From the NCBI GenBank assembly GCA_002269645.1, contig NIVC01000293.1, forward strand, positions 62,001 through 126,000: a DNA stretch of 64,000 bases. Reading direction: 5' to 3'. A model generated the notes under the pieces. That model had not been told where the DNA came from and did not search any database. It saw only the letters and a list, made by a program, of their open reading frames with translations. Shown here piece after piece: positions 5,463 to 63,834 of this stretch (position 1 is its first letter; every line of letters starts with the position of its first letter). The position numbers and the translations under genes are program-made. This DNA comes from Macrostomum lignano (Eukaryota).

Positions 5463-12093
<6,631 letters not shown>

Positions 12094-34800: not shown

Positions 34801-36386
34801 ATAGCATAAGTATAGATTGGTCCGCCAATCGGAGTTAGTGGCAGCCGATGACTGCCTGCCTTGGGTCCTTGTTTAGGAGTGGGTGCGAGGCAGGGGTTTG
34901 CTGTACGTGGGAGAGGTGGTTGGTGCGTTGTGCAGGAGACTTTTATACCCGTGTTTTATAGCTTTGCGTTGTCTAATCAACTCTCGCTGGCCCAATTTAG
35001 TTCTTTGTATTCCCACCGATAATTGGCAGGAGGTTGTTCACGTGCTGTCTGCAATCATCTGTATTCCTGTGTTTCTTCCTTCGACCAGTCCTATATTGCA
35101 AAACTGACTCAAAGTTAGTACGTGTATATGCAGTTGCATGTAACTAAACTGGATCAGGACGAAAATCCACGCGCATTCTGTGAAAAGTCAAACATTTTTA
35201 AGAGTTAAAAAAACTCAAAATATATCAAAGCCTAGTCAGAAAGTGATACCAGACTAACGCAAAAGCAGAAACCTCACGAACTTAAAAAGCTATTTAAAGG
35301 ATATTTGAGCAAGAAAAACATCGTTATAGCAGCAAAAAAGCCTTGCTAAAAGAATAAGCACATTGGATGATTGAAAATATGTTGAGCTACAACAGATAAA
35401 CTTCATATCAGAACTGCTACAACATTCTCCGCATTGCAACTCGAGATCAAGCTGTTTGAAGTCGAATTCTCTAAGACACCGACCCATGCTGCTGAAAACT
35501 TCAGCAGAGCCCACAGCAGAGCTACACACGGTAAAAAAATCCAAACCAATGCCAGTAACAAGCCGATCCGGGCAATCCATTAACTTCACAGTATCGCTGG
35601 TGCTTAAACTCATCCGGTGCACAGCTGATGGGGTGGCCAGAATCAAGCTGCGTCCTGAGACTGTCACACTACGAGCGTCCTTCACATGATCAGGCAGCTT
35701 CAAGCTCTGCTGCAGCTCAAGCGACTCCAGAGAGCGGCAGTTGACATAGCCGTCACTGAGAATGTACAGCTTCTCCATGTCATGCGTAAGACTCTGTTTG
35801 GCACCGAACTGCACATTCTGGACAGTTTGCAACTTTGCACCCGTCAGGTCAGTCATGATTATAGACATAGACAGATTTTCTTGATCTTTGCCAAGCAGAA
35901 ATATCCTCTTAGTATGGTTTACAAGTCTTCCGGAAATTAATTTGATTCCGTTGTTTGGTATTTGCAATTGGCAGATTACATCATTCAAGTCCATGCTATC
36001 GATACGAAACCACCAATCATTGATATTAAAGTCATTGGCAACAGAAAGAATACAAGAATGAGGAAGGGCATAAAAACCATCCTGCAGTGTAGTGGATATT
36101 GATTGTTTAGAGCAAAATAATCCATCCGTATTAGTGATTACATCAGTGAAAATCCAATCAGAATCCGCACAACACTGCGTTCTCTTAGCTACGCACACTG
36201 CAGATTTCCATCTGCTCTGCAGATCGTCATCAGATTCCTCAGCTTCAGCTGCACGAGTATTTACCGCCTGTTGAAGTCTCTCTATCTGTTGCACACCGCA
36301 GTCAACAATATTGGCCCACTGATTTGTGTTTGGAGCATCTACCATTGACATATTAAACTCCTTTCTCAATCGAAAACTGCTCAATG

Positions 36387-37444
36387 TGAAGTACAGGTGT
36401 CTTGCCTGTGGTTGTCTAGAGGCCTTCAATAGGAACGCTGCCCCGGTGAAGTACAGTTGCTTGAGCTCCTCTGGGAAGTCTCCGGGTTGATCTAGTAGCG
36501 TTGGTAGTGCTGCCACCAGCTTCGCAGAGTCGCAGCCTTCGGTGAGGTGCTGAGCTCGTAGAAGCAAATAACTAAGACGAGAGAAAGAGACTCGCACTTC
36601 GTGCAGATTTAGCAGTTCTCGCGCAGAGGTGCCCACCGTCAGCAGTCCCTGCCGGGCTGGTGCGGGGTGAGAGCGAAAGTGCTAGCTTCGGGCGATCTGA
36701 GCTGGCCTGCTAATTGATAGCAGGAACAATCAGAGGCAGTCACGCGCAAAGTCGGGAGTTTGGAGTTCACTTGAAGCGCAAACTTGGCACACAACTTAGA
36801 GTTCGCTAGAAACGAAACGGAAGGAACGCTAGGAAAGCTTGGAAAGCTAGGAACGCGAGGAACGCTTGTCTGAGCCAAGCCATGAGAGGGGCCGCATTTA
36901 TAGGGAGGATCGATTGCACCATAGCACGAAAGGCCCCCGCTGAGAGTCATAAGTGACTCTGTTGCTATTTTTAGCAACAAACAAGCGGGCCCTGCCTCAG
37001 AGGAGGCAAGGGGGGTCCGGGCGCACGTGATCTCCCCATAAACACGAGCCCAGCGTACAATGATGAAATCATTGCACTTTGGACTAAAGAAGGAAGAGGG
37101 CCTTGTCATGTGACTGACTCACATGACAAGGGGAAACGGCCCACAAGTGAAGGCACTCGTGACCGTGGGACCGGAAAACAGAAAGGCACTCCAAATTTGG
37201 AGATGCCTGACAGAGAACGAAACAGAGGCAGGCCAGACCAAGCTGTCTGGGCACTGCAAAAAGGGAAAACGAGACAAAAGGGGGCAAACGAGGACAAACA
37301 GACAGACAGACAAACGAGCAGAGGACAGGCCAGGGGACAGGCGGGAGGGACAGGCAACTGCCCAGCGGCAGACAGAAACCTGGGGAGAAGGCGAGGGCAA
37401 CAGCTGACTAGTGCGGCGCCTAACTAAACTAGCGACTCACTACA
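36387..37444 (-). mobile_element. Solo-LTR-like insertion, 1058 bp
   Basis: TG...CA termini (TGAAGT...ACTACA), 4-bp TSD AATG at 36383-36386 and 37445-37448, minus-strand TATAAA at 36897-36902 followed by short TC-rich repeats. No internal retroelement ORF. Confidence 0.75.
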
Positions 37445-38028
37445 AATGCGTTTCCTTCAGCATCTGCAGCACTGATTTCAGCCGACAGTTGCTCCACAGA
37501 GCTTAGAGATCTCAGACTCTGCTCCAAATCGGCGATCTTTGAGTCCAGTCTACCGATCACATTTTCTCTGCATTGTTTCACTCTCTCCATGATTGAATCG
37601 AACATCCCAGTGTAAAAAGTCGAGTCCGACGGACTCAGATTCGTCATAGTCCGCAGTGATAGGTTATGTACGACCATGTCTTATCTGATCGGACCCTGAT
37701 CGGACCCTGACTTGTAGACTTTGGAAAGACTGCTATTGGACTCTCTATTTATGGCTACTATCAGTAGTGTTGATTGCGAAGTTTGCTTGATTTAAATAGA
37801 GAATTAAAAATTGTTTTATTTCTTTTTAAGCATTGCAATGAGTTGTTTAACTTTTTTGTTTTTGAAGTTTATTTGTATATAATTATTACAATAGATTACA
37901 ATAAATTAATTAGCAATGATAAATGTACCTATAATGACAAATTATAATTCTTTATACTAAATGTTTCATTACCCAGCCATACCGTACATTTTTTCCAGTC
38001 AAACATTAAAATAGACAGTTATTAAATA

Positions 38029-40233
38029 TTAATCAGAATCTGAGTCAACGACTGTAGGCCGGCTGCCCCTTTTGCACTGCTTTTTGGCTGATAAATCATC
38101 GGCTGTGGCAGCCCGCTTCAATCCTCTGGTCGCTGTAGCAGCGGCAGCTTCAGCATTATTGGTGGCCCGTGCAGCTTTTGCTTGAAGTCGCTTCTGCCTC
38201 GCAACCTCTCTTTCCAATGCGTGCTTCAGGACGTCTTTGATAGCATTCTCAATGTTCTTGTCGCTATGCACAGGTTCCCCCGTTTTAGGGTCCCTTGGAA
38301 AGAGGTCCTGAACGGCATCTGAAAAAAATAATTATCAAGTTCATGTTGTAATGATCACGCTTGTAGATGTCTACTATCAGTAGCAACAACCGGAAATAAA
38401 AAAGAGAAATGAAACTTCAACATAATATGCCCGATTTACTGTAAATCAAAAAGTGTGATCCCCGACCCCGAGTGATTCTGGGTGTGGTGAACTGGAAGCA
38501 AACGAATAGCAATAAATTCCAACAAGCACTCACCAATAAACAACTTTCTGACTCTCTTGAATCCCAGCTGCTCATAGTCGATTATGCCGCACTCTGGAAA
38601 TTCCTCTTGGCAGCGCGGAATACAGCCTTTGCCGCTCCAATTGACCAGACACAGCATCCTCGGCGACAAACACTTGTCCATCATTCGACGGATCGTATCC
38701 GGCAGGGTGCTGCACCGGCAACCACGCAGGCCTGCGATCTGAGTTGTGACATAAAAAGTATCCGGTGAATTGTGAAAACTTTCAATTTTCAATTTTCAAA
38801 AACAAATCCTCAAAAAGTGTCACGCTCTACTTTAAGTAGAAATACATAATCACTTATTTCATTTCCACACTACACATTCGGTTATCTTTATCCACAAAGA
38901 TGACAAACTAAAAAATGAGCTGTCTTCTTTTTAAGTGATTGTGATTCTCTTCCTATCAGTGTTTCGGATATACTTACAAGGCTGGACTGAAGCTGCGTTG
39001 ATGAGAGAAAGTCAATATACTTCTCCCAGGAGTCGATGGGCTCAAAGTATTGGCGACTGCCGCGGGCTGGTCCTGATGTTCCGGAGCCGAGACGTGCGTC
39101 CGCGAGGGAAGAAGCGATGCCCTCCAGAATCGGCAGCACTTTTTGCTCCAGCTGCTTAATTCTTCGGACAGCGTCGCAGCTTCGGCGTGCGCTCAGCATG
39201 GCTAGTATGGCGACTCCGTTCAGCGATTCGGCCGTTGTTCCTTCTGCTGCGAGATACTGCCTGATGTTGTGCATCGCTGCTGGATTTAGTTGGTCGATCC
39301 CAGCGTCAGAATCTGGGTCATCGGCGACATACCGCCGAACTGTTGTCGGCGGCGTGGCTGGCACCGACATCGACGTCGCCGCGACGCTGTCCCGCCGAAC
39401 TGTTGTCGGTGGCGTGGCTGGCACCGACATCGACGTCGCCGCGACGCTGTCCCGCCGAACTGTTGTCGGTGGCGTGGCTGGCACCGACATCGACGTCGCC
39501 GCGACGCTGTCCCGCCGAACTGTTGTCGGCGGCGTGGCTGGCACCGACATCGACGTCGCCGCGACGCTGTCCCGCCGAACTGTTGTCGGCGGCGTGGCTG
39601 GCACCGACATCGACGGTGGCGTACGTGTGTTCAGCGGGTGCCGTTGAGAAGGCAGAAGGGCGTGATTGAAGGCAGGCAGCTCTGGTTGAGCAGCAAGAGC
39701 TGCAACGTCCCCTTCCTGGCTTTCCCTCATCCGGTTTTCGCTCTGCGCCTCATTCTCTTCGTCGGATGTTCTAATGTCCTTTGGTATGAGAGTGGGTGAA
39801 AGAAGCTGAGAAGTGCGAGTGAATGACGGTTAGAGAAAATTGATAATTAAATTTGAAATTGAATAAAAATATTTTCACTTACCCTCATGTTCGTGAATCG
39901 GTTCCGCCGGCCGACATTCACCCTGGGAATGGCGCACAGAATCCCTTCGAGACTCTTTCTTTTAATGCTGATCAAATCCCGAATAAATTTTATAGTCGGG
40001 TCTGTTTCCGTGTTCTCATCAAGTACAATTTGAACTATGCACGCGTCAAACCATTCATTGCCGAAGTCGGCCCTTACTCTAATTGGATTTTTATAAAAGC
40101 GATTTTCTGCGCCTAACTTCTCCCAGTCCTCCACAGTATACTCTTGGTACTCACCAAGAGCTACCTCACTGAACATGAGCTCAATGACCTGCTTGTCGGT
40201 CTCAAAATAAACAATGAATCGGACAGATTCCAT
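38029..40233 (-). CDS. Transposon accessory protein with C-terminal DUF4806/BEN-like region; exons 40233-39883, 39805-38978, 38738-38534, 38318-38029 (~557 aa)
   Basis: Exons join in phase. Motif TIRRMMDKCLS...LVNWSGKG...IDAVQDLFP...IENAIKDVLKHALER resembles DUF4806 proteins that accompany animal EnSpm-like transposases. Confidence 0.72.
39332..39616. repeat. Coding 60-bp tandem repeat (SMSVPATPPTTVRRDSVAAT) x~4.7
   Basis: Units start at 39332, 39392, 39452, 39512, 39572 and are nearly identical. Confidence 0.95.
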
Positions 40234-40544
40234 TGCTGTCTGTCAAATCTAGATGGGAATCGGAACTGGAAAAAAGACTGGATTGACTGTCTTCTATGCA
40301 GGTTGGCATGAGAATATAGCTATAGTTGCGGGAAAGGGATGCAGGAAAATCAAATTCCTCATCCAATCAGCGCAGCTATAGCTGTATTGACCAACCCTCA
40401 CCCATTACTCGACCTCCTCCCCATTCTTCCCTCCCCCTTCCCACTCGGGCCTTGATCCTAAATCAAGCTTCAAAAAATGAAAAATGAAAAATATTAAAAA
40501 TCATTCGAAATGAAAAAAAATTGAGTTGTATTTGCAAAACAAAT

Positions 40545-42785
40545 ATGCCGAAGGAAAAAAAAACCGAGGACGACACGAATCCAAGCAGACAGTTTCAAAA
40601 CTTCCTATCTGAAAGCCGGAAGTCTGCACTACCCATTGAAAATCTACATGCCGATGCAAATATTTTCCCAGCTTGCGCTGAAACCGACCCTGCAGATCGC
40701 GATTTCGAATTCGACTCAGGATTCCTCGCACAGTGCATGAATGCTTTGGTTCTTCCGAGCGAATACGAAGATGACGAAGCCAGAGTAGCTTCTGATGATG
40801 AAGATAGTGAAGACGAGGCAGCGAAGCCCAGCATGGACACTCTAGACGACGAGCTGCTCGTCCTTTTCTTGCTGCACAACCTGTCTCACAGGGCCATGCA
40901 GTTCCTCTTAAATGCACTTCACAGTCGTGGATTGCCTGTTTCCAAATCCCTTTACTTATTAACAACGAAGGATGGGAAAAAGAAAGTCCTTAAATACCCA
41001 ATGGGGACAGGCGACTTTGCATACTTAGGTATTGCCTCGAATATCGGCTACCTCCTGAGCAAAAATCTACTGAGATTGGGCCAAGCATCTACTCTTCCGA
41101 ACGGTTCTAAAGGGTTCGAAGTCGACATCAAAATTGGCATTGACGGGATGCCAGTTTACAGGGCATCGAACTATAGTGCCTGGCCCATCTTGGCGCTAAT
41201 CTCTGGATTCGACAGACCCGTCCCGATCGGGCTGTTTGCTGGAATAGGTGAGTGACGAAAAAACTAAGCGATATTTCCCACTTTAAATCCCACATCCGAT
41301 TTAAATCCCACGCCTACCAAATCCCACACTCATTATATTTTCACACTTATTAAAATTATGTAAATAAAATTCGAAATTTAAATTTTTATCCTATTTGAAT
41401 CTCAGGAAAGCCGCCTCTAGAAGACTACATAGCCGAATTTTGCAAGGAGGCTGCGGAACTGATGTCGGACTTCAAGATGATTGAAGGAGTGAACATCAAG
41501 ATCCGAAAACTAGACTTCATCTGCGATGCGCCAGCTCGCTCATTCATCTGCAAGACACTGGGGCACAATTCTCATGCCGGCTGTTTCTATTGTAGAAGTA
41601 TAGGAAAGACCGTCGACAGACGAGTTGTGTACCCGACAACAGCGGGAGAGTCGCGCACGGCTGAAGATTATCGCACAGGAAGGTAGGAAGATTACTTGCT
41701 AGTTAATAAAAAAGTAATCTCCCTGCGAGAATCGCCCATAATATCTTTAAGTGAATCGCCCATAATCTCCACATTTCTTCCGTCTATCTCCACATAATCC
41801 TCAACATTTCAGTGAGTCAAACCAGCGCGCTGGGCCCAGTCCCCTGATGCAACTGCCGGGATTGGAGTTTCCGCAGTGCATTCCACCGGACTATATGCAT
41901 CTGGTCTGCCTAGGAACAGTGCGGAAGCTGTTCCACTTTCTGTTTGCTACGGATGACGGCCGCCACTGCAAACTTCGGCCCAGCGACATAGCAGCACTAT
42001 CAGTCGAAGTACAAAAGGTCGCTCCGTTCACACCATCCGAATTCCAACGACGACCTCGTCGGATTGATCGGGAGTTGTCTCATTTTAAGGCGTCAGAGTT
42101 GAAAAACTTTGTTCTGTATTTCGGCCCGGTTATCTTTCGGCGATTTCTTCCCGTCCTCCTGTACAAAAATTTCCTGCTTCTACAATTTGCAATATATGTG
42201 TTCATGACGCCAGAGTTATTATCTCATCCCGAGATTTTTCGCTACGCCGCAGCTGCCCTAACCATGTTTGTCAGCGACGCCCATAAGCTGTACGGAAACA
42301 GTGTCATGAGTCACAACACTCACGTGCTGCTGCACCTTCCGGAATTTGTTCGTTCCTTTGGTAGCTTGAGCAATTTCTGCGCCTTCCCCTTTGAGAACTA
42401 TTTGTCGCACCTAAAAAAGCGACTACGAGTAACTCGCTTCACCACAGCACATTTGCTGGCACAAATGCTGAACGTGCGCGAAATGCTGACCACGAACCCA
42501 GCTTCATCTCTGCGCTACAGTCCAAAGCCGCCTAACAAGTGCTGCGTGATTGGAGACAACATAGTGCGTATTTCAGCAGTCCATGGCAATGGAGAAGTCA
42601 CAGGAGTGATTCTCCAATTTAATGGTGGCCTGTACGAGTACCCATACACATCGGAGCTCCTGCGCATAGGGTACTACTGTGACTCCCGTCAAACAATTAC
42701 CGGAATGCCAAAGAAGAAGTGCATAATGCTACCGCAACCAATAGGCTGCCTTGTTGTGCCACTGGTGTCAGAGGATTTGAATTGA
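40545..42785 (+). CDS. EnSpm/CACTA-like DDE transposase; exons 40545-41247, 41406-41682, 41813-42785
   Basis: Exons join in phase. Motifs IGIDGMP, WPIL, FICDAPARSF..GH...GCFYC, PDYMHLVCLG, FKASELKNFVLY, NTHVLLHL, FPFENYL. No stop or frameshift seen. Confidence 0.9.
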
Positions 42786-44914
42786 ACATCGAATATTATT
42801 CTCATATGCTCGTATTGACCATACTCTCAATTAGATTAGGTGCACATAAGCTTGCAGTTATAAACTCGTGAGCTGTAAAGGTCATAAAGTATTGAAATAA
42901 ACGCATTCGTAATTTAGGTGCACCTAACCTAATGCGAAAAGTCATTTGTAATAATATTTATAAGTAATCATACTTCTAGTTATTTTCACGACCAATTCCA
43001 TGCTATTCTACCTGGACTATTCTAACCTGGACTGCAAGCCTCAGAATTTCCTCATGTGGGCCTCACTGGGGTTTCGGTGCACAAGATGCGGGGCAGAGAC
43101 CAAGTTGGGGCAGGGAAGAGAGGGGAAGACAGGAAAGGCAGTGAACAATGTGCAGTGAATTTAATTCCAAGTTATTTTATTCAGGGCGACCCATTTCATT
43201 CCTTGCTCTTTTCATACTTTGAAGTATGCTCTTTATTGTTCTAGACAAGTGTACGGCTTGTCAAAAAGCAAATTCTCCTGTTTGTTAGTTTAAATTTCTA
43301 TTTTTCTTCTTGCAACAATGCAAATTGCAATCCAATGTTCCCGCCTCTCGTATCTGGGGCTCTCCGCGGCCAGCCGGTTCGCAATGGGCAGGTTGGGGGA
43401 CCTCCCGCCTTCACTATCTCACTGACGGGCAGTTTTTTTAACTGACGGGCAAACAATTACTCCAGGTTTCAATTTGCTGGGTTGTTTGCCCCAAGTTTCA
43501 ATCTCTGACTCTGAATTTTGGTTGCAAGTCCAGATTGCAAAGTATAGAAGTTTGGTCTTAGAAAAGGATTCCAAAGCACCAGGTGGGGCCGTGGGGGCGG
43601 CAGAGGCAAAGACCTGGCCCTGCAATTCCCAGCGCTCTGCTTTTCGGTTCAACCTAGGAGCAACTGCACCCAGTGCCCAGTGGTGCAGTAAACCAAATAA
43701 TTCTATATATCAATTCTAGATTAAGTTTGATATATAGAATTCTTTGAGTAAACCCAGCCCCAGTTCTGCGGCGCCTTTCGGCCTGGGCATATAATTCTAG
43801 ATATAGTTTGAAACGAGTATCTAGAATGCTATGGCCTGGGTCACAGGGGCAATAAATCACTTGTACGAGCACTGGGTTTCCACACAAGGCCTTCACAGCG
43901 CAGCCCTTATCTGCTCGCAGGCAGATAAGGGCTCATGGGGAGAGATATTTAAGAGCGGGGAACAACGGAGCCCTGGCTTTATGTAACAATTCTGTAACAA
44001 TTCTTACATGTAACAATGTAACAGTTATGTAACACTTTAGCTCGTATAAACAGAAAATCTTTTGCTCGTTTTGATCTAAATATTGCAGATGGTGTGGTGT
44101 GTTGCTCCATAGACTCATATAGTAGCATCCGGACTGTAAATTATTTTTTTCGTTTTTTTATTACATGGGAGCAACTTCTCCCCATTATGAAGCTAGCTTA
44201 AATTTTCGGGCCTCAAGGAGTCTATTTTTGCTCGTTCAGTCAGTCAGTCACTCACTCACCCAAGTCACTCTCTAACTCGCTCATCCAATCAGTTACTCAC
44301 TCACTCATTCTATATACGGTATTTACATGTAAGGCGACCTAGCGGGCTGGCCTAGCGGAACTCTTTGCCTCCATTTGGCTCCCCAATTTCCTCTTACCGG
44401 TAAAACCAAACTACGGGTTGATTGTCTAGGGGTTTTTGCATTGCATAGGGGTTTTTGTCTTTGTCCATGGACTCCTAGATATACTAGGTATTACTATATC
44501 TAGGAGTCCATGCTTTGTCTCGTCTCGAAGTATTTCTTGGTTTATTGTGTCTTATTTTTCCGTGGGCAGTGGGACCATTTTTCCACTATTTGCAAAAAAG
44601 CAAGTCCAGGCAGGCAGTGCGGGATGCGCAGTCTAGTTATATTTCTTGGTCTGTGCCCCTTGGGCATGCCCCTCTAAAGTATTGTGAACAAAGAAGGATC
44701 TGTGCTTCAAATAAAGATCAAGGCCAGCCAGGCTGTAAATTAAAAATGGCCATGTTTGAATTGTTCGAAGAACACCTGGATGAGGCAGGCGGAAGGGAAG
44801 CAGGATTGTTTATATCATTTTTATTGCTTGTTTATTCAGTATTTATGACAGTACATAACTTTATTGCCGGTGGTAAAGAACGAGAGTCGCAATTTAGTCG
44901 CAAGTTTGGGGAGA

Positions 44915-45690
44915 GATGAGGGTGAGACTGTGAGATAGATGAGGGTTAGACTGTGAGATAGATGAGGGTGAGACTGTGAGATAGATGAGGGTGAGACTGT
45001 GAGATAGATGAGGGTGAGACTGTGAGATAGATGAGGGTGAGACTGTGAGATAGATGAGGGTGAGACTGTGAGATAGATGAGGGTGAGACTGTGAGATAGA
45101 TGAGGGTGAGACTGTGAGATAGATGAGGGTGAGACTGTGAGATAGATGAGGGTGAGACTGTGAGATAGATGAGGGTGAGATTGTGAGATAGATGAGGGTG
45201 AGACTGTGAGATAGATGATGGTGAGACTGTGAGATAGATGAGGGTGAGACTGTGAGATAGATGAGGGTGAGACTGTGAGATAGATGAGGGTGAGACTGTG
45301 AGATAGATGAGGGTGAGACTGTGAGATAGATGAGGGTGAGACTGTGAGATAGATGAGGGTGAGACTGTGAGATAGATGAGGGTGAGACTGTGAGATAGAT
45401 GAGGGTGAGACTGTGAGATAGATGAGGGTGAGACTGTGAGATAGATGAGGGTGAGACTGTGAGATAGATGAGGGTGAGACTGTGAGATAGATGAGGGTGA
45501 GACTGTGAGATAGATGAGGGTGAGACTGTGAGATAGATGAGGGTGAGACTGTGAGATAGATGAGGGTGAGACTGTGAGATAGATGAGGGTGAGACTGTGA
45601 GATAGATGATGGTGAGACTGTGAGATAGATGATGGTGAGACTGTGAGATAGATGATGGTGAGACTGTGAGATAGACATGAAGGTGAGACT
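44915..45690. repeat. 23-bp minisatellite (GAGATAGATGAGGGTGAGACTGT) inside the transposon
   Basis: About 33 almost identical units. Confidence 0.97.
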
Positions 45691-46544
45691 GAGATATCGA
45701 TGCTGCGTGAACTGTCAGAATATCCTCTGCTGGAACTCATACTCAATCTCTCTACTCTTATACTCTAATAAGAGTAGTCTGGGCTCGTTAAAATAATTTT
45801 TCCTACTGGAACTGGTGTTACCTCAACGGTCTACTGACAGTAGCACATCAAGAATGCTTTAATTTTTATTCGCCGTTTTTAGTTTGAATTAAATCAGATG
45901 TCAAAGGACTTGTTACGGACTCACAAAATGAGTCAGGACAGAAAGGACTGAAATCGGACCCCCCAAAATTACGCTGAAAATAGAACAAAATATCCTCGAA
46001 AAACACCGAAAAAGACATTAACAGTCGGTTTAAAGTCTTAATTGACAAAAAAATTTTTTTTGGAAATCAGCTCATGGGGGACCAATCCGAGTCCGATCAG
46101 GGTCCGCCGGACTCAACCTTTTACACTGGGATGTCAGCTGCATCAGCCCTGTCACTTTCCAGATCAAACTGGGCCCCTCTGGTGTTTTTGATTAGCTGGG
46201 ACACTTTGGCCAATGACTCATCGGTTTCTATTTTGATGGCGCTCAATTGCAGCTGGAACTGTTTCTCATCTTTCTTCAAGTGCTCAGCACACAGAGGACC
46301 TTCCCAGTAGAGCCCATGACCGGAAGCTTGACTGTAGCAACTCCTCAGGCTGCACTGCTTGTCCTGCTCAGAGGTTTCATCGTTCGGTAGATCGCTATGT
46401 GTGCTGCTAGTTGCCATGGCATGCATTAAAGAAAAGTGCATATCATAAACTGTGCTATCATAGGTAGCTAACTTTCAGAGAAGCTTATCTACACATATCA
46501 ATTATAGTTAGGGATTGCCAAAACTTCAGTCTGTTCGATTCCTA

Positions 46545-50117: not shown

Positions 50118-50519
50118 GGCAATAGAAGAGCTTGAAAAAAATTAGACAAAATTTTTGTCGATTTTGTCAATTGTCTATTAGCGCGGATGCTAATTACGAG
50201 CTATAATAGATGGTACTATGATATCTGGGACCACTAAGTATACTAACGTCCGTTGACAAGTGTGGCAATTGTTCACATAGTTGAAAACTAATTCCTCATT
50301 GATTATTTCTTCGTGAAAAGTTATAACCACGCGCTTAATATTACAATCACCTTGCAAGAAAAATTATGGGGTTTTATTGTAGGTGTTGCAATTAGCAACG
50401 TAAAGACATGCTCCTAGTCTTTGTTAATTTTAAACGGCGTCAGTAGTGAGCTTTTTCGAAATGATACCTTACTAGATTAAAGTAAAAGTCTCTTAAAAAA
50501 CGGCACAACAGCGATTGGA

Positions 50520-52028: not shown

Positions 52029-53997
52029 AGCAGAAAAGAGAAAATATTAGCTACTGAGAATACGAGTAATACTAAAAATATATATATAAATACTAAATGC
52101 TAATCGCTGCTGAAGCTGTAATAGAAGTGATTGTTGATAAAAAACGAATTGTCTATATATGCAAGGGCTTGAGCTTGCTACCATACCATGCTGTACTGCA
52201 TCGGAACCTCTCATTGGTCAGTGCCTCGGTTGGTATTGAGGTTGCCTATATTTTTGAGTCTAAGAAAGCAAAAAAAATTAGTCATGATTTGATGGAAAGC
52301 ATTGATTCGGTGTTGAGACGCTTAAGCTCCTCGAGAAGGGCTCAGTATTTCACAAAAATTCAGCGAGAGTTTTAGTAAATCAGATGCTTATAAATTGAAA
52401 TTATCTAAAAATTTAGAAAGTCATTAGCCTGACAGTTTTCATATCGTATAATCATGCGAATAATCACAGAAAGTGAAAATGAGTTACCTAGTACCTACCT
52501 AAAATGAGCTTACATACAAACTATCCACCTATACTAAATCTTTAAGATCTTTATGTTTACTAATATTCAAATAACTAAAAAATGGAGATAAAAACGTTTG
52601 AAAAATAAGAAACTTATTTGTGACGCAATCCGCCGTTTATATTGTGGTTTAGAAAAACAAACTTAAAAACCTTCGAGACTGCGAAAGCATAGCAGCTATA
52701 AAAAACGAACTTTGATCGGCGCTAAATTTGAGCACTGGAAATGACAAATTTTGCAGATATTACGAGCTAACAGATTTTACTAACATAGAACTTCGAAATC
52801 CACAGCCAGAAGCCTGTTGCTTACCCATAAAAATTTCTGGCGCGCAAGGATTTTTTAGGATCTATATGTGCACTTTATGTAGAGTTGCGGGATTAAAGTG
52901 TTGCTTGCAAAAAATTAGGGAAGTGAGTTTTCGGTAATATAAAGTTATGCGATCTCAAATTTGGGCGTCGTTAAGGTTAGGCAATTTAACAAATCGAAAA
53001 TTTGTGGTGTGTGAAAGCAACAACCTTCAGACAAAAAGACAGTTACCTATCAACGGCACATTGTTCAAGAATCGAACGAAACTTTCCCCATGACTATCAC
53101 TAATTTGAGTACTTTAACAGATCGTTATTGAAAGAGATATATGAAATTGACAAAAATTACACGTCATATAGCCTCAGAATTCTGGGTTTAGTGCTCAAAT
53201 AGACAATAACTATTTCAATAATTTTTTACAGAAAAATAATAAAGGATTTTGAGACTTCTAGGTCAAAACTATATACTCGTATTTATGCATATCTATACGC
53301 CCGTATAATAGAAAAAAATTCTAAACAACAATTGGGTACGTAAAAATAATAGCATAAACATTAAATAGTTTCCGACAGTAGTAAAGTAGAAAAATCTGTA
53401 GCATGTCTTGATGAATACTTTCGGAAAATTTTAGGAATGCCAAAACCACATTGCCAGTATAAAAGTATGTTTTTACATTGGTAACACTTACATGGCAGCG
53501 GACATTAGGTTAGCTGATTTATCGTAAATTAGAGTGAGCAAACAAAAATACGATTGTAAAAATATTAAAAAACCTCAAACACCAATCGTCTACTTCTGTT
53601 CTAAATTGGACGGCTCAATTTAAAAAAGCATAAGAGCTATGCAGAAAGGTTGAAATGCTGAAATAAGATGGAATCTAAGGTTTATACTCATGCACACAGC
53701 CAGTAGCGTAGCCAAGGTCAAGAGGGACTTAGAGTCCTGACAGAAAAGCTGATAGGAACATGAATTTCTAATAGCCAATGAACAACGCAAGTTTTTATAA
53801 GGTATAGAAACACTTAAGTTGTGTGGACTATAGAAATTCCTATTAATCTTATTTGTCCCACCAATCAGCTATATCGGCTGTCTCAACACAAAGCCAAGAG
53901 ATCAAACTAGAAATGTATTGACACTCCCTATCATCGAATAAGTTTAAAACTCGGTAGCTCAGTTTAAAAAACTTTCACAATTTACAAAGTTTTAGTA

Positions 53998-54435
53998 CTA
54001 GTGGGCTGACTGACTTTTGACATCAACCGAAAGTTTCTCTACACAGCTGAGAGACCTCTGGATCTGCTCCATATCTGCAATATTCGAGTTTAATCTACCA
54101 AGCACTTTCTCCCTGCACTCATTCACTCTTGCAATGACAGCCTCAAACAGGTCAGCCGTCTCAGCCCGGTCAGTCGTCAGCTCGAATTGAGCAGCTTTAG
54201 CGCGGTTGGTGAGCTGCGAAGCACCAGCGAGTATCGAATCGGTTTCATTCTTAATGCTGGCGAACCGACTTTTAAACTGCTCTTTGTCACTCTCGAGATG
54301 CTCAGCGCAGAGAGGCCCGGCCCAATAGTGTCCGCGGCCCGAAGCCGGGCTCTGGCAGTGGCTGAGGCTGCACAGTCGGCTTGCTGGTCGATCCTGCTCG
54401 TCGCTTGTTGCGCTTGATTTACGTTTTGTTGCCAT
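53998..54435 (-). pseudogene. Family copy D: N-terminal half only (zinc motif + coiled coil), stop after SVDVKSQSAH
   Basis: CSLSHC...YWAGPLCAEH and TDRAETADLFEAVIARVNECREKVLGRL match the family, then homology ends abruptly. Confidence 0.72.
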
Positions 54436-54674
54436 CGTTAAAGCATATATGGGCCCAGTTTTCAAAAAAGCAGTCCATGATATTGTCGTGTCAATCAAAA
54501 AACAAACTTTCAACCAGATTTTCCAAAAAATTGTCGGTACTTGTCACTTCATAATTTTCCTACACATTCACAGTTCTTAACCAGAAAGCAAACATAAAAT
54601 AATTGAATTAATTTAAGCAAAACAAAGAACTGGTTCAGTCTGCTTAAAAAATGTAAGTAAACGCAGAGACATTA

Positions 54675-54920
54675 AATATACTTAGCAACATTGAAAAGTC
54701 GCCATTACAGAGGATTCCATCTGTGGTCGCCACTTTTGAGAGAGTGCAGGTAAAGTCTCTCAATCTTTGCGAGTGACGCAACTCAGCTACGCCACGCGGC
54801 AGACTTGAGTTGGGGAATGAAGTGGGGGAGCGGTGTGCGAGGGTTGGACGGATTGAAGCTACCCCGATCAGTTTTATAGTATCTTTTATTTCATTCATTC
54901 AAAATAGTCCAAGAGAAATT
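54675..54920 (+). repeat. Left arm of a diverged ~250-bp inverted repeat
   Basis: Reverse complement of 56897-57150 aligns, e.g. ATATACTTAGCAACAT(T/C)GAAAAGTCGCCAT and TCTGTGGTCGCCACTTTTGAGA. Confidence 0.85.
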
Positions 54921-55439
54921 GCTTACTGGTGCATAGAGTGATAACTTTTCAATGTTGCTGAGTATAATATGTATATTTTAAAAAGTGCCTGCTATAACAC
55001 AACAAAAGGCATACATGTAGTGTATGAGGATGATATAATACATACTTCGTATGAGGATACTTTAGAGGATCATATACCACACAGCTGACGAGCCAAGTAA
55101 ACTGAATTGTAAAATAAATTTACGATAAAACTGGGTACCAGTATAAGCTATCTTAGAAAAATATTCTAATTAAAGCTTACAAGCTAAAAGTAAACACTTA
55201 CATGCTTTAATTGGTAGATTAATTGGTAGATATTGGTAGAATCAATGTGCTATCTTTAATTTTAATATACAAATTTGACGGTAAGAAATTGTCTTTTAAA
55301 AAACATTTTTTTCTAATAAAAATGATGGAGCGTGGATTCATTACAGAGTAAAAGTATTGAAAGAAAAAGAGCCAAACAAAAGGAGACTAAGCCATTGAAG
55401 TGTTTTGAAATGGAAATTAGTATCAACACGAAATAAATC

Positions 55440-55560
55440 ATTGCACGATAACGAAGCACTGCCGCAGATGATAGATTGGCAGGTACTATTGTTTTTGAGC
55501 CCCATATATGCTAAACGTCCGTAGAGAAGTGTGACGATTGTCCACAGTGTTGCAACCTAT
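55440..55560 (-). pseudogene. Fragment of the family C-terminal Cys region
   Basis: Minus strand encodes NSTCQSIICGS, compared with NTTCQSIICSG in copy E. Confidence 0.55.
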
Positions 55561-56896
55561 TTGAAACAATGACAAAAATCCTTGTCATTTTATCACGCGC
55601 ATAATATTTCAATTCGACGCGTTCAATTAGCGATTTGCTTCACGTACACACGGTTAGTTTGCCAGGCTGTCACAGGCTCGATCGCTTGATCTACGACTGG
55701 TCGCTGGACTGGTCTGCAGTTACTTTTCTGTCTTTTTAAGAAGCATAGCTGAAATGCGTAATTCGACAGACTGCCACTGATTGTCACTCAATAGATTGGT
55801 CACCTTTTAACTGGAGTTGATTACAAGTGTAATAGCTGATAACAGTGCATTACCGAAATTAGGTGAAGATAAACCAGCTTTAAAGGAAGTCCGGTCAGTG
55901 CTGTCTCCTTTTGAGATGTTTGACAGAATACTGTGTATTTTGGCTAATTAAACTATAAAAAAGGTTTTGTCGAGAAAGCTGCACCAAAATGAATACAAGC
56001 TTAAAAGTAAACGATACCTGTAACAATAAAGACTGACTAGATTAAAAGCAGAAAATGTCAAAACTACCAACAAAAAATCTAATAACAATAATTAACTCAA
56101 ATTTTGCAAAAAACAAGGTGTACCACAAATCTATCATTACTACAAGTGCAGTTAACTACTCGAGATAATGCTGATACACTTTCTCGATAAATGAAAACCA
56201 AGGAAACACCACAAAGCTTATCTAAAACCAAGCTGAAAAAATTAATAGACGTTAAAAGAAGAAGCACAGCTAATCTTAGTTCTGCGAGCTAGATTCAGCT
56301 AAATTGACTGGCAATAATTGGCGCAACCAGGATTTAAACGTAAACGCAGATATAAAAATGGAACACAGAGCAACGCGCCGTACTAAACAGGTTATATTCG
56401 ATAGCTGGTCGGACCAGTTGACGATAAACGCTGAAATATTCCGTCTGGGTCCCTCACTTTCAGGTCTCTAACAGCAGAGTGACGCTGATGCAAAAAAAAA
56501 TCGGAATGGGATCGATGGTCAAAAACACAAAATTCTTCTGGTGAAGCCTAGCACGTAGCATCCCCAGCTTGGGATGTCCAGTATTCACCGTGTCTCACTA
56601 CGGCAGTACGCAGCTGGTAGGGCAGCTACAAATCTTGTGTCTTAAAAAATGGAGTATGGAACAAGCTGGATGACACGAGAGTTAAAAAGTACTACTTCGT
56701 ACAATCTATTGATTTATATGAGCAATCAATGATTACATTAGTAGCCCTGTTAGAAGAGTAGAGGCCCATGGGATTATCTGTGAACATATTTACTAACCAT
56801 CGTTACTGCCAAATAAGTAATCTAAAAAACACCATTGCGCTTTATCACCTAAAGAAAATGTACTGAGAAACATTGAAAAGTCGCCAATCTATGCGC

Positions 56897-57150
56897 CAAT
56901 GAGAGATTTCTCTTGGACTATTCTGAAATCTGAAATAAAAGACGCGAGAAACTGAGGGGTAGCTTTAATCAGTTCAACCCACATACACGGCTTCCCACAC
57001 TTCATTCCTCAACCAAAGTCAGCCGCGTGGCGTCGCTAAGTTGCGTCAGTCGCACAGATTGAGATACTTTTTACCTGAATTCTCAAAAGTGGCGACCACA
57101 GACGGAATCTTCTGTGATGGCGACTTTTCGATGTTGCTAAGTATATAATT
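56897..57150 (-). repeat. Right arm of a diverged ~250-bp inverted repeat
   Basis: Matches 54675-54920 in reverse complement. Confidence 0.85.
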
Positions 57151-57408
57151 GTCAAGAAAACAACTACTAATTTTAAAAAAACGGAAATGGACTACGTATA
57201 AGATATATAAAAATTTGGGCGCGGTTAAAAACTTACCAAAAAACATACATCATATTAAAACTGCATGCAAGCAAAATAGTATAGGTAGCAACTAAAAACA
57301 TTCTCCTCGTCTCCGATCAATTTTAAAAAAGGTCCTTAGTTAAATTATTCGAAATCATACCTTAATAGAGTAAAAGTATCAGAACAAAACGAGCAAACAG
57401 CTCCATGA

Positions 57409-58920
57409 TTAATCATAACCAAAAGAAACGCATCCAAGGAGTTGGTCTCCGCATGACATGTGCACAAGAAGAACAAAACAGCTTGTGGAATCTAAGTAGG
57501 CACCGCTGCAGATTATAGATTGGCAGGTGGTATTGTAATTGCCCTGTCGACAAGTTTGGCAATAGTTTACGTAGTTGAAACCCGAGTTTGTCAGACTGAA
57601 ACTTCTCAACCGCTGCCCTGAGCTGCTTACAAAAACAGCATTTCCATTAGTTTCGAACACTGCAATCAATCTAGAGTCAATGACAGCGACACAAAAGTTC
57701 TGACTGTCTATCAGCTTCTTCACACCACCGGTGCTGATGTTTAATCGGTGTACACCTGATGGAGTAGCCAGAATTAAGCTGCGTCCTGAAGCTGTTACAC
57801 TGCGAGCGTCCTTCACATGATCAGGCAGCGTCAAGCTCTGCTGCAGCTCAAGTGACTCCAGAGAGAGGCAGTTCACGCAACCGTAGCTAAGAATGTACAG
57901 CTTCTCCATGTCATGAGTGAGGCTTATTGCAGCTTCGCACTGCACATTCTGGACACTTCGCAACTGGGTGCCAGTCAGGTCAGTCACAAATAGGGACTGA
58001 TTGGTTCCAAGAAGAAATATCTGCTGAAGATGATCTACAAGAGTACCTGCAGCTAGCTGCATTGCGTCGTTATAAACGTTCCACTGACTGATAATTTGCA
58101 TGTCTGAATTACAGACCATGAAAAACCAATACTGACAATCATTAGCCACACAAAAAGTGCTTCCGCTAGGGAGAGCTTGAAATCCGTTTTGGTTTGTCTT
58201 CGTGACTGCTTGAGCTGAGAAATAGTATCCAGCAGTGTTGCAGCAAACACCAGCGAGAATATAGGAAAAGTAGTTGTCCAAATTAGGAGCCACATTAACA
58301 GTGGGCACGGCAGACTCAAGTCTAGCTTTTAGTTTCTCACCGTCAGGATCCTCAGCCTCATCTGCAAAAGTCTCAACAGCCTGTTGCAATCTCAGTACCT
58401 GGTGCACGCTGTTGTCTACCGGATCGACAAACTCTTCTGATATCGGGACATCCTCAAGCGAGATCTGGACCTCTTGATGCAGCCTGAATCCTTTAGTTGA
58501 AACACCTTTGGCTTCCTCCTCGCCGATATCGACCGAAAGTTTCTCTATGAAGCCGAGAGCTCTCAAGTTCTGCTCCACATTGTCTATTTTAGAGTCCAAT
58601 CTGCTCATCACGTTTTCTCTGCACTGCAGCAATCTCTGAAATATTGCGTCAAACAGATCAGCTGCCTCAGCTCTGTCGCTGGTCAGTTCAAACAGAGCTC
58701 CTCGGTTTGCTTTTAGGAGTTCGTTCGTCTTCGCTAATGGTTCAGTGTTCTTTGATTTTATATCGGCGTATCTCTCCTCGAAAATCTTTTCATCTTTACC
58801 GAGATGCCGCTCGCAGAGTTGCCCGCTCCAGAATTTGCCAAGACCTGACGACGGCTCCGTGCAATGCGTCATGGTGCACGTCCGTGCATCGGTATCTGCA
58901 TCGACGCTTTCAGTTTCCAT
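57409..58920 (-). CDS. Family copy E: CCCH zinc motif + coiled coil + beta-propeller-like protein, 503 aa, intronless CDS
   Basis: Open ORF and close paralogue of copy C. Canonical acceptor CTAATATTTTCTCTTTTCAG 2 nt before the ATG. Confidence 0.88.
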   Translation of the reverse strand: METESVDADTDARTCTMTHCTEPSSGLGKFWSGQLCERHLGKDEKIFEERYADIKSKNTEPLAKTNELLKANRGALFELTSDRAEAADLFDAIFQRLLQCRENVMSRLDSKIDNVEQNLRALGFIEKLSVDIGEEEAKGVSTKGFRLHQEVQISLEDVPISEEFVDPVDNSVHQVLRLQQAVETFADEAEDPDGEKLKARLESAVPTVNVAPNLDNYFSYILAGVCCNTAGYYFSAQAVTKTNQNGFQALPSGSTFCVANDCQYWFFMVCNSDMQIISQWNVYNDAMQLAAGTLVDHLQQIFLLGTNQSLFVTDLTGTQLRSVQNVQCEAAISLTHDMEKLYILSYGCVNCLSLESLELQQSLTLPDHVKDARSVTASGRSLILATPSGVHRLNISTGGVKKLIDSQNFCVAVIDSRLIAVFETNGNAVFVSSSGQRLRSFSLTNSGFNYVNYCQTCRQGNYNTTCQSIICSGAYLDSTSCFVLLVHMSCGDQLLGCVSFGYD

Positions 58921-62552: not shown

Positions 62553-62770
62553 TCAATATTCACCAACAGAAACGCGCCCAAGGAGTCGGTAACAAAATGG
62601 CATCTGCACAATAACAACGAAACAGCTTCTGGAATTTAAATAGGCTCCGCAGCCGATAATATAGTAGGCGACAGTATTCGTACTACACTGTGCACCAGCT
62701 TGACTATTGTGATTCAATTTAAAACCAGAGTTTGACAGAGTGAAACTTTTTAACTGCTGCCCTGAGACAT
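62553..62770 (-). pseudogene. Family fragment: last ~70 codons only
   Basis: SGQQLKSFTLSNSGF...CGAYLNSRSCFVVIVQMPFCYRLLGRVSVG matches the C-termini of copies C/E; upstream sequence is unrelated. Confidence 0.75.
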
Positions 62771-63689
62771 TCTCGGCTGGTCTGCCCATGAGGTTTGCTT
62801 ATTATGTAAGCTTGATACGAAAAATCGGACATATTTGCAACAGAATGTTCATAGTCACTTGGTGTAACCTGTTGAAGGTGCCGACGGCGTCCGGGTGTTG
62901 ACGGAATGCTCAACAGACTAGCTGAGGATGTCCAGCAGTTGATTCTTGCCCGCTGTCGAGGCTTGATCAGTGAATCTAGAGAAATTCTAATCAGGCTGTC
63001 CATAGTCACCTGGTGTCATCTGTTGAAGGTCCAGAAGCTCCGCCTGGGTGAAGGCTAGTGACCAACAAAGACAGAGCTAATGCAGACACATGTGGTCGAC
63101 GTGCTGTTGAAATTTGGAGACTTGGCAAGGCTGCACTGAGGCGCAGTGCTGATTGGCGCACAGGGGTGTACCGAATACACTAGCGCTAATGGGAAAAATC
63201 CGACCTTCAGGTAGAATCGTCGAATATCTCGACGGTCCGGAGGGCTGGCGACTTGATTCTTGTTTGAGAATGTGCGCAACAAAAAGTTAGTCCGTGTTCT
63301 TGAATTTCGTGTGCCTGCGTTGCTTCGTTCGGCGCAGCAAAAAAATTGTCTTTGATTTCCCCCCCCCCTCTTGGTAGTTCTACTGTTAATTGGTCTTCAG
63401 TTCACTTTAGAATCAATCAATGCAATACAGTAGCCATTGGCGAAAGTCTGCTGGCGTAGTGACAACTTACATTATGTTAAAACGCATTTCCGATAAATAC
63501 ATTTAAATGGTTTAAATCCTGACCAATTTAAAAAATATACCGGGCTTGATGACCAACATATCAAAAAGAAGACGCCGTTTGAGAACAAATGACCGGAAAA
63601 GATCTTAAGATCTTAAAAATCTCAAAACATCTAAAAAATTGCAAGCAAAATTGTGGGGTTTTGTTGTACGCTCGTAGATGTTGCAGTTA

Positions 63690-63834
63690 GCTTCATCGAT
63701 AAAGCTACTTGTCTTCGATAAATTTTAAACTGTGTCGTTAGTTAGCTTTTTCGAAATGATACCTTACTAGAGTAAAGTAAAAGTCTGAACAAAACTGCAT
63801 AACAGCGACTGGATTAACCAATAGAAACGCGCCA
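63690..63834 (-). pseudogene. Family fragment: final codons (RVSIG-stop) plus 3' flank, truncated at ~63835
   Basis: Near-copy of 50395-50538; homology stops just before CAGTGGTGGG. Confidence 0.7.

What the first reader, a model, noticed from the sequence alone, without database searches (positions are those of the whole stretch)
35290..63834. Tandem birth-and-death cluster of an unrecognised zinc-finger/coiled-coil/beta-propeller family
Seen: at least five substantial paralogues (A 46417-35290, B 50117-49209, C 52028-50520, D 54435-53998, E 58920-57409) plus several C-terminal fragments, all on the minus strand, with intronless CDSs in a genome whose other multi-exon genes are intron-rich. 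Established: RING-less B-box/coiled-coil/propeller (TRIM-NHL-like) genes expand in invertebrates and are often linked to recognition or defence. Inference: a lineage-specific, rapidly turning-over recognition family. I cannot assign it to a named family by eye.
Basis: partly seen in the sequence, partly recalled or inferred. Interest (0 to 1): 0.75.

Follow-up and report, generated by a model that had tools for sequence, protein, structure and literature searches.

The report
Flatworm NHL-propeller gene cluster in flux
This is a real tandem cluster of single-exon genes in the flatworm Macrostomum lignano. They encode a flatworm-restricted offshoot of TRIM-NHL proteins (small zinc-type motif, long helical stalk, six-bladed propeller), and the cluster is visibly gaining and losing copies; it is an interesting lineage-specific family, not a new kind of system.

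Summary
The region carries one paralogous family, all on the minus strand. Only C (50520-52028) and E (57409-58920) are complete single-exon genes, 85% identical. A is split into three pieces by two transposable-element insertions that two other M. lignano versions of the locus lack. D and B are the 5' and 3' relics of one further gene type, which survives intact (505 aa) in another version.

The window is about 95-96% identical to M. lignano contigs. Whole-database searches found family members almost only in M. lignano (one unnamed JGI hit).

AlphaFold2 gives a confident 24-strand model for the C-terminal 307 residues (pLDDT 86.7). I read it as six four-stranded blades, and all top 50 Foldseek matches are propellers. 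The window clade has no direct Pfam or PDB sequence match. It is homologous (hhalign 99.8%) to distant M. lignano paralogues whose last blades match the NHL repeats of Thin, TRIM71, TRIM2/3 and Brat (E 1e-18 to 1e-7).

There is no RING and no B-box. Instead, an unassigned C-x4-C-x15-C-x2-H motif is invariant across 16 paralogues.

The array grows by duplicating a ~6.9-kb unit and decays by deletion, stop codons and TE insertion. A recognition or defence role remains untested: dN/dS is 0.4-0.6 and highest in propeller loops.

The parts
57409..58920 (-). Gene E: intact single-exon ORF, 503 aa, C/E subtype
   Evidence: ORF list; 85% aa identity to C; 89% to the positional counterpart E1 in contig 254
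53998..54435 (-). D: 145-codon ORF holding only the N-terminal zinc motif and part of the helical region; a partial duplicate of the first ~140 codons of the DB-type gene
   Evidence: tblastn: DB_829 aa 1-140 at 90%; 93.6% nt identity to L004 13758-14208; a D copy follows each C/E-type gene in the reference arrays
50520..52028 (-). Gene C: intact single-exon ORF, 502 aa, C/E subtype; the protein modelled here
   Evidence: 99.4% aa identity to an unannotated intact ORF in contig 254 (L001 4187-5692); AF2 models
49209..50120 (-). B: 5'-truncated relic (propeller only, 302-aa ORF) of the DB-type gene; its 5' half was lost in a 2.8-kb deletion relative to contig 829
   Evidence: DB_829 aa 203-505 at 96%; window 50118/50120 joins L004 11588 to 14396; the same truncation is annotated as a 302-aa gene in contig 254
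46130..46417 (-). Gene A, piece 1 (codons 1-96); the reading frame hits a stop just inside the transposon
   Evidence: P0005 aa 1-96 at 99%; ORF ends ...DRADAADIPV*; junction shown
37606..46130 (+). 8,525-bp DNA transposon inserted in gene A: 31-bp imperfect terminal inverted repeats (CCCAGTGTAAAA...), 2-bp target-site duplication AT, transposase-like ORF pieces on the + strand (40521-41255, 41462-41686, 41847-42785), internal minisatellites (39332-39615, 44914-45702)
   Evidence: Junctions and inverted repeats; absent from L001 and L004; tandem repeats; only weak Pfam hits (DUF4218 E 0.2, DUF1258 E 0.011), so the superfamily assignment (CMC/EnSpm-like) is tentative
37445..37605 (-). Gene A, piece 2 (about codons 96-149)
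   Evidence: 100% nt identity to L001 10286-10446
36387..37444 (.). 1,058-bp insert in gene A with TG...CA ends and a 4-bp target-site duplication (CATT on the gene strand); looks like a solo LTR
   Evidence: absent from L001 and L004; no other copy in the sequence held here
35290..36386 (-). Gene A, piece 3 (about codons 149-512, propeller and C-terminus, open to the stop codon)
   Evidence: A_829 aa 148-511 at 94.5%
62562..62765 (-). Relic of the last 69 codons of a family member
   Evidence: tblastn C aa 434-502, 49%, E 8e-13; conserved at L002 15663-15866
63639..63836 (-). 3' end and flank of a degraded C/E-type copy whose body lies beyond the window end
   Evidence: 80% nt identity to 50352-50542; collinear with the frameshifted copy at L002 13308-14641
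52029..58920 (-). One ~6.9-kb tandem duplication unit: a C/E-type gene, a spacer and D
   Evidence: E start to C start is 6,892 bp; contig 254 has one more such unit (L002 19539-31053); contig 829 shows D-E'-D-C'-DB

Best explanation
The region is a tandem, same-orientation array of single-exon genes from a superfamily found so far almost only in Macrostomum lignano.

Protein plan (about 500 aa): an N-terminal four-ligand zinc-type motif (C-x4-C-x15-C-x2-H), about 160 residues of long alpha-helices, and a six-bladed beta-propeller. The propeller is a strongly diverged NHL-repeat domain. In the window's clade it carries a Cys-rich insert in blade 6.

Origin (inferred): the family most plausibly descends from a TRIM-NHL-type ancestor that lost its RING and B-box.

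How the array evolves: unequal crossing-over duplicates a ~6.9-kb unit made of one C/E-type gene plus the first ~140 codons of the neighbouring DB-type gene. This leaves a truncated D after each new copy. The array decays through deletion (B), in-frame stops and frameshifts (copies in the reference contigs) and transposon insertion (A in this window). The differences between this window and the two reference contigs fit the three diverged subgenome copies reported for this neopolyploid.

Likely mode of action (inferred, not shown): a non-catalytic intracellular binding protein. The helical region would pair two chains, as in TRIM proteins. Each propeller would bind a target, either RNA or protein, through its top-surface loops. 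Without a RING it cannot itself be a ubiquitin ligase.
For: Identity and lineage:
- 95-96% DNA identity to M. lignano contigs.
- Only M. lignano proteins among the hits checked by name, plus one unnamed JGI protein.

Architecture:
- AF2 model of residues 196-502 has pLDDT 86.7 and pTM 0.87, with 24 strands, which I read as 6 blades of 4.
- All top 50 Foldseek PDB hits are propellers, probability 1.00.
- The window clade aligns to distant paralogues with hhalign probability 99.8%, E 6e-29, over 422 columns, reaching into their first NHL-like repeat.
- Those paralogues match the NHL repeats of Thin (1e-18), TRIM71 (1e-17), TRIM2 (8e-11) and Brat (1e-7).
- C5, C10, C26 and H29 of the N-terminal motif are invariant in 16 paralogues.
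- Long helices are predicted at residues 37-189.

Array dynamics:
- Gene order and copy number differ among three versions of the locus.
- An intact 505-aa DB gene in contig 829 corresponds to D plus B here.
- The TE insertions in A have target-site duplications and empty sites in both other versions.
- Three subgenomes with many large indels are published for M. lignano (PMC10733133).

Single-exon genes: gene span equals CDS length for six annotated members, including a distant tandem pair.

Constraint: dN/dS is 0.38-0.62 between copies. By domain the medians are 0.34 in the helical part, 0.59 in the propeller and 0.71 in the propeller loops.
Against: - The window clade itself has no direct sequence match to NHL. 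Its profile gives 0 PDB hits at E<=10, and Pfam gives nothing above threshold.
- Foldseek ranks 7- and 8-bladed WD40 and BamB propellers first, with TM only 0.45-0.57. No NHL structure is in the 50 matches listed.
- The NHL assignment therefore rests on transitive homology and on my blade count from the strand list.
- The N-terminal motif is modelled at pLDDT below 50, and zinc binding is only inferred from the invariant Cys/His pattern.
- A crude heptad test did not support a canonical coiled coil.
- There is no expression, ligand or dimerisation evidence.
- About 6 kb between D2 and C in contig 254 was not fetched or did not align, so copy counts there are minimum values.
Confidence: 0.8

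Rival explanations
1. One reading: an intracellular recognition or defence family, like a restriction factor, under diversifying selection. The propeller surface would track fast-evolving targets such as viruses or transposons.
For: - Lineage-specific expansion with rapid copy turnover.
- dN/dS rises from the helical region (0.34) to the propeller (0.59) and its loops (0.71). Two E-type comparisons exceed 1 in the loops, at 3.2 and 1.4.
- The family derives from a TRIM-like lineage. TRIM families are known for antiviral expansions (general knowledge).
Against: - Whole-gene dN/dS is below 1 in every pair.
- The loop values above 1 rest on few substitutions and on non-independent pairs. No site-model test was possible.
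- The fraction of variable sites is the same in the helical and propeller parts, 0.24 each.
- No expression or induction data were found.
- Relaxed constraint in redundant copies of a neopolyploid explains the same numbers.
Confidence: 0.2
2. A germline or stem-cell post-transcriptional regulator family. It would work like the RING-less TRIM-NHL protein Brat, or like LIN-41/TRIM71, with the propeller binding specific mRNAs and repressing them.
For: - The closest solved relatives of the superfamily's NHL repeats are RNA-binding TRIM-NHL proteins (TRIM71, Brat) and Thin.
- The propeller domain is mildly basic (pI 8.15) while the N-terminal half is acidic (pI 4.7).
- Reproduction-related genes evolve fast in Macrostomum (PMC7336406, abstract shown).
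Against: - No conservation of known RNA-contact residues was tested.
- Many NHL domains bind proteins instead.
- No expression data.
- Strong divergence from canonical NHL.
Confidence: 0.2
3. The copies are cargo or products of a mobile element, or retrocopies, and not a host gene array. That would explain why they are single-exon and multi-copy.
For: - All members checked are single-exon.
- C and E share alignable DNA only over the CDS plus about 90 bp 5' and about 130 bp 3'.
- The founder of the superfamily could have been a retrocopy (speculation).
Against: - The copies lie in tandem in one orientation with conserved order in three locus versions.
- The duplication unit includes a partial neighbouring gene (D), which is the signature of unequal crossing-over or segmental duplication and not of transposition.
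- Inverted-repeat and duplication junctions were seen only for the two inserts in A. The flanks of C and E were not scanned for inverted repeats, target-site duplications or poly(A) tails.
Confidence: 0.05
4. Assembly artefact: the extra copies are collapsed or misjoined haplotigs of a single gene.
For: M. lignano assemblies are hard to build because of three similar subgenomes (PMC10733133).
Against: - Four subtypes in the array are only 39-46% identical.
- C and E are 85% identical, with different flanks, 6.9 kb apart.
- The same order is seen in two independent contigs.
Confidence: 0.02

Closest known systems
TRIM-NHL proteins (Brat, Thin/TRIM32, LIN-41/TRIM71, TRIM2/3)
   Same: - A helical region followed by a C-terminal six-bladed propeller.
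- The superfamily's distant members match TRIM-NHL NHL repeats better than other NHL proteins: Thin 1e-18, TRIM71 1e-17, TRIM2 8e-11 and Brat 1e-7, against NHLRC2 2.5e-4.
- Brat shows that a RING-less member can work purely as a binder (general knowledge).
   Different: - No RING and no B-box.
- Instead, a single four-ligand C-x4-C-x15-C-x2-H motif with no Pfam or PDB match.
- No filamin domain.
- The window clade's propeller is too diverged for any direct NHL hit and has a Cys-rich insert in blade 6.
- Single-exon genes in tandem arrays, found almost only in M. lignano.
Lineage-specific tandem arrays that evolve by birth and death (for example fish finTRIMs and invertebrate TRIM-like expansions)
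   Same: Same-orientation tandem paralogues, truncated and disrupted copies, copy-number differences between locus versions, and moderately raised dN/dS concentrated in the putative binding domain.
   Different: - A different binding domain (NHL-derived propeller, not B30.2/SPRY).
- No E3 ligase module.
- No evidence yet of immune function or of site-specific positive selection.
- The comparison with those families is from general knowledge and was not tested here.
Generic WD40 and BamB-type beta-propellers
   Same: These are the top Foldseek matches, at probability 1.00. There is a weak Pfam WD40 hit in B, E 0.054.
   Different: - Those propellers have 7-8 blades, against six here.
- TM-scores are only 0.45-0.57.
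- No WD40 sequence signature above threshold.
- The sequence-profile link goes to NHL instead.

Membership tests
TRIM-NHL (tripartite motif with NHL repeats) | N-terminal RING finger (eight zinc ligands, C3HC4 pattern) | tested here: not met
   Only about 14-25 residues precede the four-ligand motif. No RING-type Pfam hit in 16 family proteins scanned. The alignment shows just C, C, C, H conserved.
TRIM-NHL (tripartite motif with NHL repeats) | One or two B-box zinc fingers (seven to eight ligands) | tested here: not met
   No zf-B_box hit in Pfam scans at E<=1 or E<=0.1. The N-terminal motif profile finds no B-box chain in the PDB at E<=10. The spacing C-x4-C-x15-C-x2-H does not fit B-box consensus patterns, which I quote from memory.
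TRIM-NHL (tripartite motif with NHL repeats) | Coiled-coil dimerisation region between the zinc modules and the C-terminal domain | tested here: inconclusive
   AF2 predicts long helices at 37-138, 141-156 and 167-189, but at pLDDT 40-60. The crude heptad score peaked at 0.50 against a null 95th percentile of 0.60. Only weak sub-threshold Pfam hits to coiled-coil families.
TRIM-NHL (tripartite motif with NHL repeats) | C-terminal six-bladed NHL-repeat beta-propeller | tested here: inconclusive
   Fold: 24 strands, read as six blades, pLDDT 86.7. Direct sequence test of the window clade: 0 PDB hits and no Pfam NHL. Indirect: hhalign 99.8% to paralogues whose last two blades match NHL at 1e-18 to 1e-7. 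Pfam NHL is sub-threshold in P0009 (E 0.0066) and P0014.
WD40-repeat proteins | Seven (typically) WD40 repeats detectable by Pfam PF00400 | tested here: not met
   Only one sub-threshold hit, in B (E 0.054, 14.5 bits against a cut-off of 27). The model has six blades.
Tandem gene array evolving by birth and death | Several paralogues adjacent in the same orientation, of differing ages | tested here: met
   Five loci plus two relics on the minus strand. Four subtypes are 39-46% identical, and recent C/E copies are 84-99% identical.
Tandem gene array evolving by birth and death | Pseudogenes and truncated copies alongside intact genes | tested here: met
   A is disrupted by two TEs. B lacks its 5' half and D is a 5' partial duplicate. 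There are relics at 62562-62765 and 63639-63836. The reference contigs carry frameshifted or stop-containing copies.
Tandem gene array evolving by birth and death | Copy-number and content differences between closely related versions of the locus | tested here: met
   Contig 254 has one more [C/E + D] unit. Contig 829 keeps intact DB and A genes. The window has unique TE insertions.

The most novel reading that the evidence does not exclude
The superfamily is a previously undescribed class of RING-less, B-box-less NHL sensors built on a new zinc-binding module. Macrostomum would have expanded it as an intracellular system that recognises fast-evolving targets (viruses, transposons or a partner's reproductive molecules). 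The propeller loops would diversify under positive selection, and the tandem arrays would supply new specificities.
Probability: 0.15. Interest if true: 0.6.

Novelty: new variant of a known kind. Interest (0 to 1): 0.35.

Why it matters
It gives an unnamed set of M. lignano 'hypothetical proteins' a structural and evolutionary identity: NHL-derived propeller proteins with a new N-terminal Cys/His motif.

It also gives a base-level example of how a tandem array turns over between the subgenomes of a recent polyploid: the duplication unit, a partial-gene by-product, a deletion, and dated TE insertions with empty sites.

M. lignano supports transgenesis (PMC5730564) and, from general knowledge, RNAi, so the function can be tested directly. 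If the propeller loops prove to be under diversifying selection, the family would be a candidate flatworm-specific recognition system.

Tried and rejected
- Pfam scans of 16 family proteins found nothing above threshold.
- phmmer of C and the window-clade profile against PDB sequences gave no meaningful hit.
- The profile of the N-terminal motif against the PDB gave only chance matches to transporters. A B-box is rejected.
- The first full-length AF2 model was weak (pLDDT 61.5). It was replaced by a domain model built on a deeper alignment.
- Foldseek could not tell NHL from WD40 or BamB.
- A crude heptad-periodicity test for a coiled coil was not significant.
- I tested whether D and B are exons of one live gene with C nested in an intron. 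Rejected: D ends in a stop, codons ~140-202 of the DB type are missing from the window, and contig 829 shows the undeleted state.
- I tested whether the inserts in A could be introns. Rejected: both have target-site duplications, the large one has terminal inverted repeats, both have empty sites in two other versions, no usable acceptor AG sits at the 3' junction of the large insert (checked by eye), and the frame stops just after the junction.
- Pfam typing of the transposon ORFs gave only weak hits.
- Literature: no paper combines M. lignano with NHL, and no paper names these gene IDs. Supplements of four M. lignano papers hold none of the six gene IDs. A search on TRIM-NHL expansions in invertebrates returned nothing relevant.
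Full report
**What is in the sequence.** Six-frame ORF listing and tblastn with family proteins place homologous segments on the minus strand throughout 35290-63836.
- Two are complete: C (50520-52028, 502 aa) and E (57409-58920, 503 aa). They are 85% identical in protein and 88.6% in DNA. The alignable DNA covers only the CDS plus about 90 bp upstream and about 130 bp downstream.
- D (53998-54435) holds only the first ~140 codons.
- B (49209-50120) holds only the last ~300 codons.
- A is in three pieces: 46130-46417, 37445-37605 and 35290-36386.
- A relic of the last 69 codons lies at 62562-62765.
- The 3' tail of a further degraded copy lies at 63639-63836, next to the window end.

So the loci are real, but only two of the five 'substantial paralogues' are intact genes.

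**Where the window comes from.** The best protein hits are 'hypothetical protein BOX15_Mlig...' of Macrostomum lignano. I fetched the encoding contigs of assembly GCA_002269645.1. The window is collinear with NIVC01000254.1 (loci L001 and L002) and with NIVC01000829.1 (L004), at 94-96% identity in the long collinear blocks and with many large indels. M. lignano is a recent polyploid whose assembly holds three diverged subgenome copies (S, L1, L2). These are highly similar at small scale and differ mostly by indels (PMC10733133; PMC5704211, abstract). The window behaves like a third version of this locus. I cannot say which subgenome, allele or assembly it is.

**Comparison of the three versions.** In transcription order:
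- Contig 254: F (512 aa), a frameshifted copy, a C-terminal relic, E1, D, E2, D, about 6 kb that I did not examine, C, B, A.
- Contig 829 (the part fetched): D, E' (two in-frame stops), D, C', an intact 505-aa gene I call DB, and an intact 512-aa A.
- Window: tail of the degraded copy, the relic, E, D, C, B, A.

Three conclusions follow.
1. DB codons 1-140 match window D at 90%, and codons 203-505 match window B at 96%. D and B are therefore relics of one gene subtype. In the window, the DNA matching L004 11588 and L004 14396 is directly adjacent (50118/50120). A 2.8-kb deletion therefore removed the 5' half of DB and left B.
2. A truncated D follows each C/E-type gene. This is what tandem duplication produces when the ~6.9-kb unit has one breakpoint inside DB. 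The E-to-C start distance is 6,892 bp. Contig 254 carries one more such unit than the window.
3. A is a contiguous single ORF in both reference contigs. The contig 254 copy has a C-terminal frameshift (P0005) and the contig 829 copy is intact. In the window, A carries two insertions.

**The two insertions in A.**
- The first (37606-46130, 8,525 bp) has 31-bp imperfect terminal inverted repeats beginning CCCAGTGTAAAA and a 2-bp AT target-site duplication. It has transposase-like ORF fragments on the plus strand and two internal minisatellites. Pfam support for a CMC/EnSpm-type transposase is weak (DUF4218 E 0.2, DUF1258 E 0.011), so I call it a DNA transposon of uncertain superfamily.
- The second (36387-37444, 1,058 bp) starts TG, ends CA, and is flanked by a 4-bp duplication, like a solo LTR.
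- The reading frame of piece 1 stops four codons into the transposon. By eye, no usable acceptor AG sits at the far junction. A is therefore disrupted in this version, not spliced.

**What the proteins are.** Neither the window's proteins nor ten distant paralogues reach any Pfam threshold.
- A full HMMER scan of 1.84 billion representative proteins with the clade profile found 20 hits. All 15 of the 22 proteins that I checked by name are M. lignano proteins. Most full-length ones are about 470-580 aa with the same layout.
- Two further profile searches of the 5.8-billion set again returned M. lignano proteins, plus one unnamed JGI protein.
- Four positions of the N-terminal motif, C-x4-C-x15-C-x2-H, are invariant across 16 paralogues that are otherwise 22-43% identical over this motif stretch. 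That points to a metal site. The motif matches nothing in the PDB or Pfam, and it has too few ligands for a RING or a B-box.
- AF2 predicts long helices for residues 37-189 at low confidence. A crude heptad test was not significant. 'Coiled coil' is therefore plausible but unproven.

**The propeller.** A domain model of residues 196-502, built on a 21-sequence alignment, reached pLDDT 86.7 and pTM 0.87.
- It has 24 strands, which I read as six four-stranded blades closed by N- and C-terminal strands. A less confident Cys-rich insert (pLDDT 55-63) sits in blade 6.
- All top 50 Foldseek PDB matches are beta-propellers at probability 1.00. They are 7- and 8-bladed WD40 and BamB types, with TM only about 0.45-0.57.

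**The link to NHL.** This link is indirect but strong.
- The window-clade profile alone hits nothing in the PDB.
- It aligns to a profile of eleven distant M. lignano paralogues with hhalign probability 99.8% (E 6e-29) over 422 columns. The alignment runs from the zinc motif into their first NHL-like repeat.
- That paralogue profile matches the NHL repeats of Thin (1.2e-18), TRIM71 (1.2e-17), TRIM2 (8e-11), TRIM3 and Brat (1e-7), ahead of non-TRIM NHL proteins.
- I therefore read the family as a highly diverged, RING-less and B-box-less offshoot of TRIM-NHL-type proteins. It fails membership of TRIM-NHL proper on two defining features.

**Gene structure.** The gene span equals the CDS length for the six annotated members I looked up (512, 474, 302, 145, 510 and 509 aa). 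A distant pair, P0009 and P0010, is also tandem and co-oriented. Neighbouring unrelated genes span far more DNA than their products need. 'Intronless' holds for the family, apart from the broken A.

**Selection.**
- Nei-Gojobori dN/dS is 0.38 for C against E, 0.47-0.62 among E-type copies, and 0.51 for B between versions.
- By domain, the medians are 0.32 (zinc motif), 0.34 (helical), 0.59 (propeller), 0.47 (propeller strands) and 0.71 (propeller loops).
- Two E-type comparisons exceed 1 in the loops.
- This fits either relaxed constraint on redundant copies or diversifying selection on the binding face. The counts are small and the pairs are not independent, so it is a lead only.
- The propeller is mildly basic (pI 8.15) and the N-terminal half is acidic (pI 4.7).
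- The N-terminus shows no obvious signal peptide (by eye), so an intracellular role is likely.

**Mechanism and verdict.**
- Shown: the homology, the fold class, the array structure and its turnover events.
- Inferred: zinc binding, dimerisation through the helices, ligand binding by the propeller loops, and the lack of ligase activity because no RING is present.
I found no expression data to choose between them.
- Overall this is a new variant of a known kind. It is of moderate interest as a lineage-specific family with an unassigned zinc-type motif, and as a clean example of array turnover in a neopolyploid.

Noticed in passing
window 12153-15127: About 3 kb of CT-rich low-complexity minisatellite with extreme strand skew (GC skew down to -0.8). 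It reads as long pseudo-ORFs in three frames.
   Followed up: no
window 1152-1686: A GACA/GTCT-type short tandem repeat that gives mirror-image pseudo-ORFs on both strands.
   Followed up: no
window 10167-10832 (+), 16359-17390 (+), 18021-22355 (-), 26509-28902 (-): Neighbouring ordinary genes: a Cation_efflux (ZnT-like) exon (E 2e-22), a Swi3/TIPIN replication-fork protection protein (E 3e-21), a 1,444-aa ORF with no Pfam match, and a protein with a KY-like Ig domain (E 9e-25) and an RS-rich tail. L001 blocks extend collinearly to about window 27097, so only the KY-like gene was shown to lie in a region shared with contig 254.
   Followed up: partly
window 39332-39615 and 44914-45702: A 60-bp x 4.7 repeat and a 23-bp x 34 minisatellite, both inside the 8.5-kb transposon in gene A. 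They account for several long spurious ORFs in the ORF list.
   Followed up: partly
L002 10001-21053 (contig NIVC01000254.1): The reference gene models P0001 and P0002 join a 32-codon N-terminal relic to the next intact gene across a ~9.4-kb 'intron'. This gives a duplicated N-terminus and is probably a mis-annotation.
   Followed up: partly
L001 4187-5692 (contig NIVC01000254.1): An intact 502-aa ORF, 99.4% identical to window gene C, has no gene call in the look-up for GCA_002269645.1. It is also absent from the protein databases searched.
   Followed up: partly
window 47593-48657 vs 52550-53500: The non-coding DNA upstream of C resembles the spacer between B and A (65-79% identity). This may be a trace of an older duplication that included flanks.
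   Followed up: no
L003 10001-18477 (contig NIVC01003278.1): Distant superfamily members P0009 and P0010 form another co-oriented single-exon tandem group, with a 254-aa partial copy between them and a further fragment downstream. The array habit is therefore general for the superfamily.
   Followed up: partly
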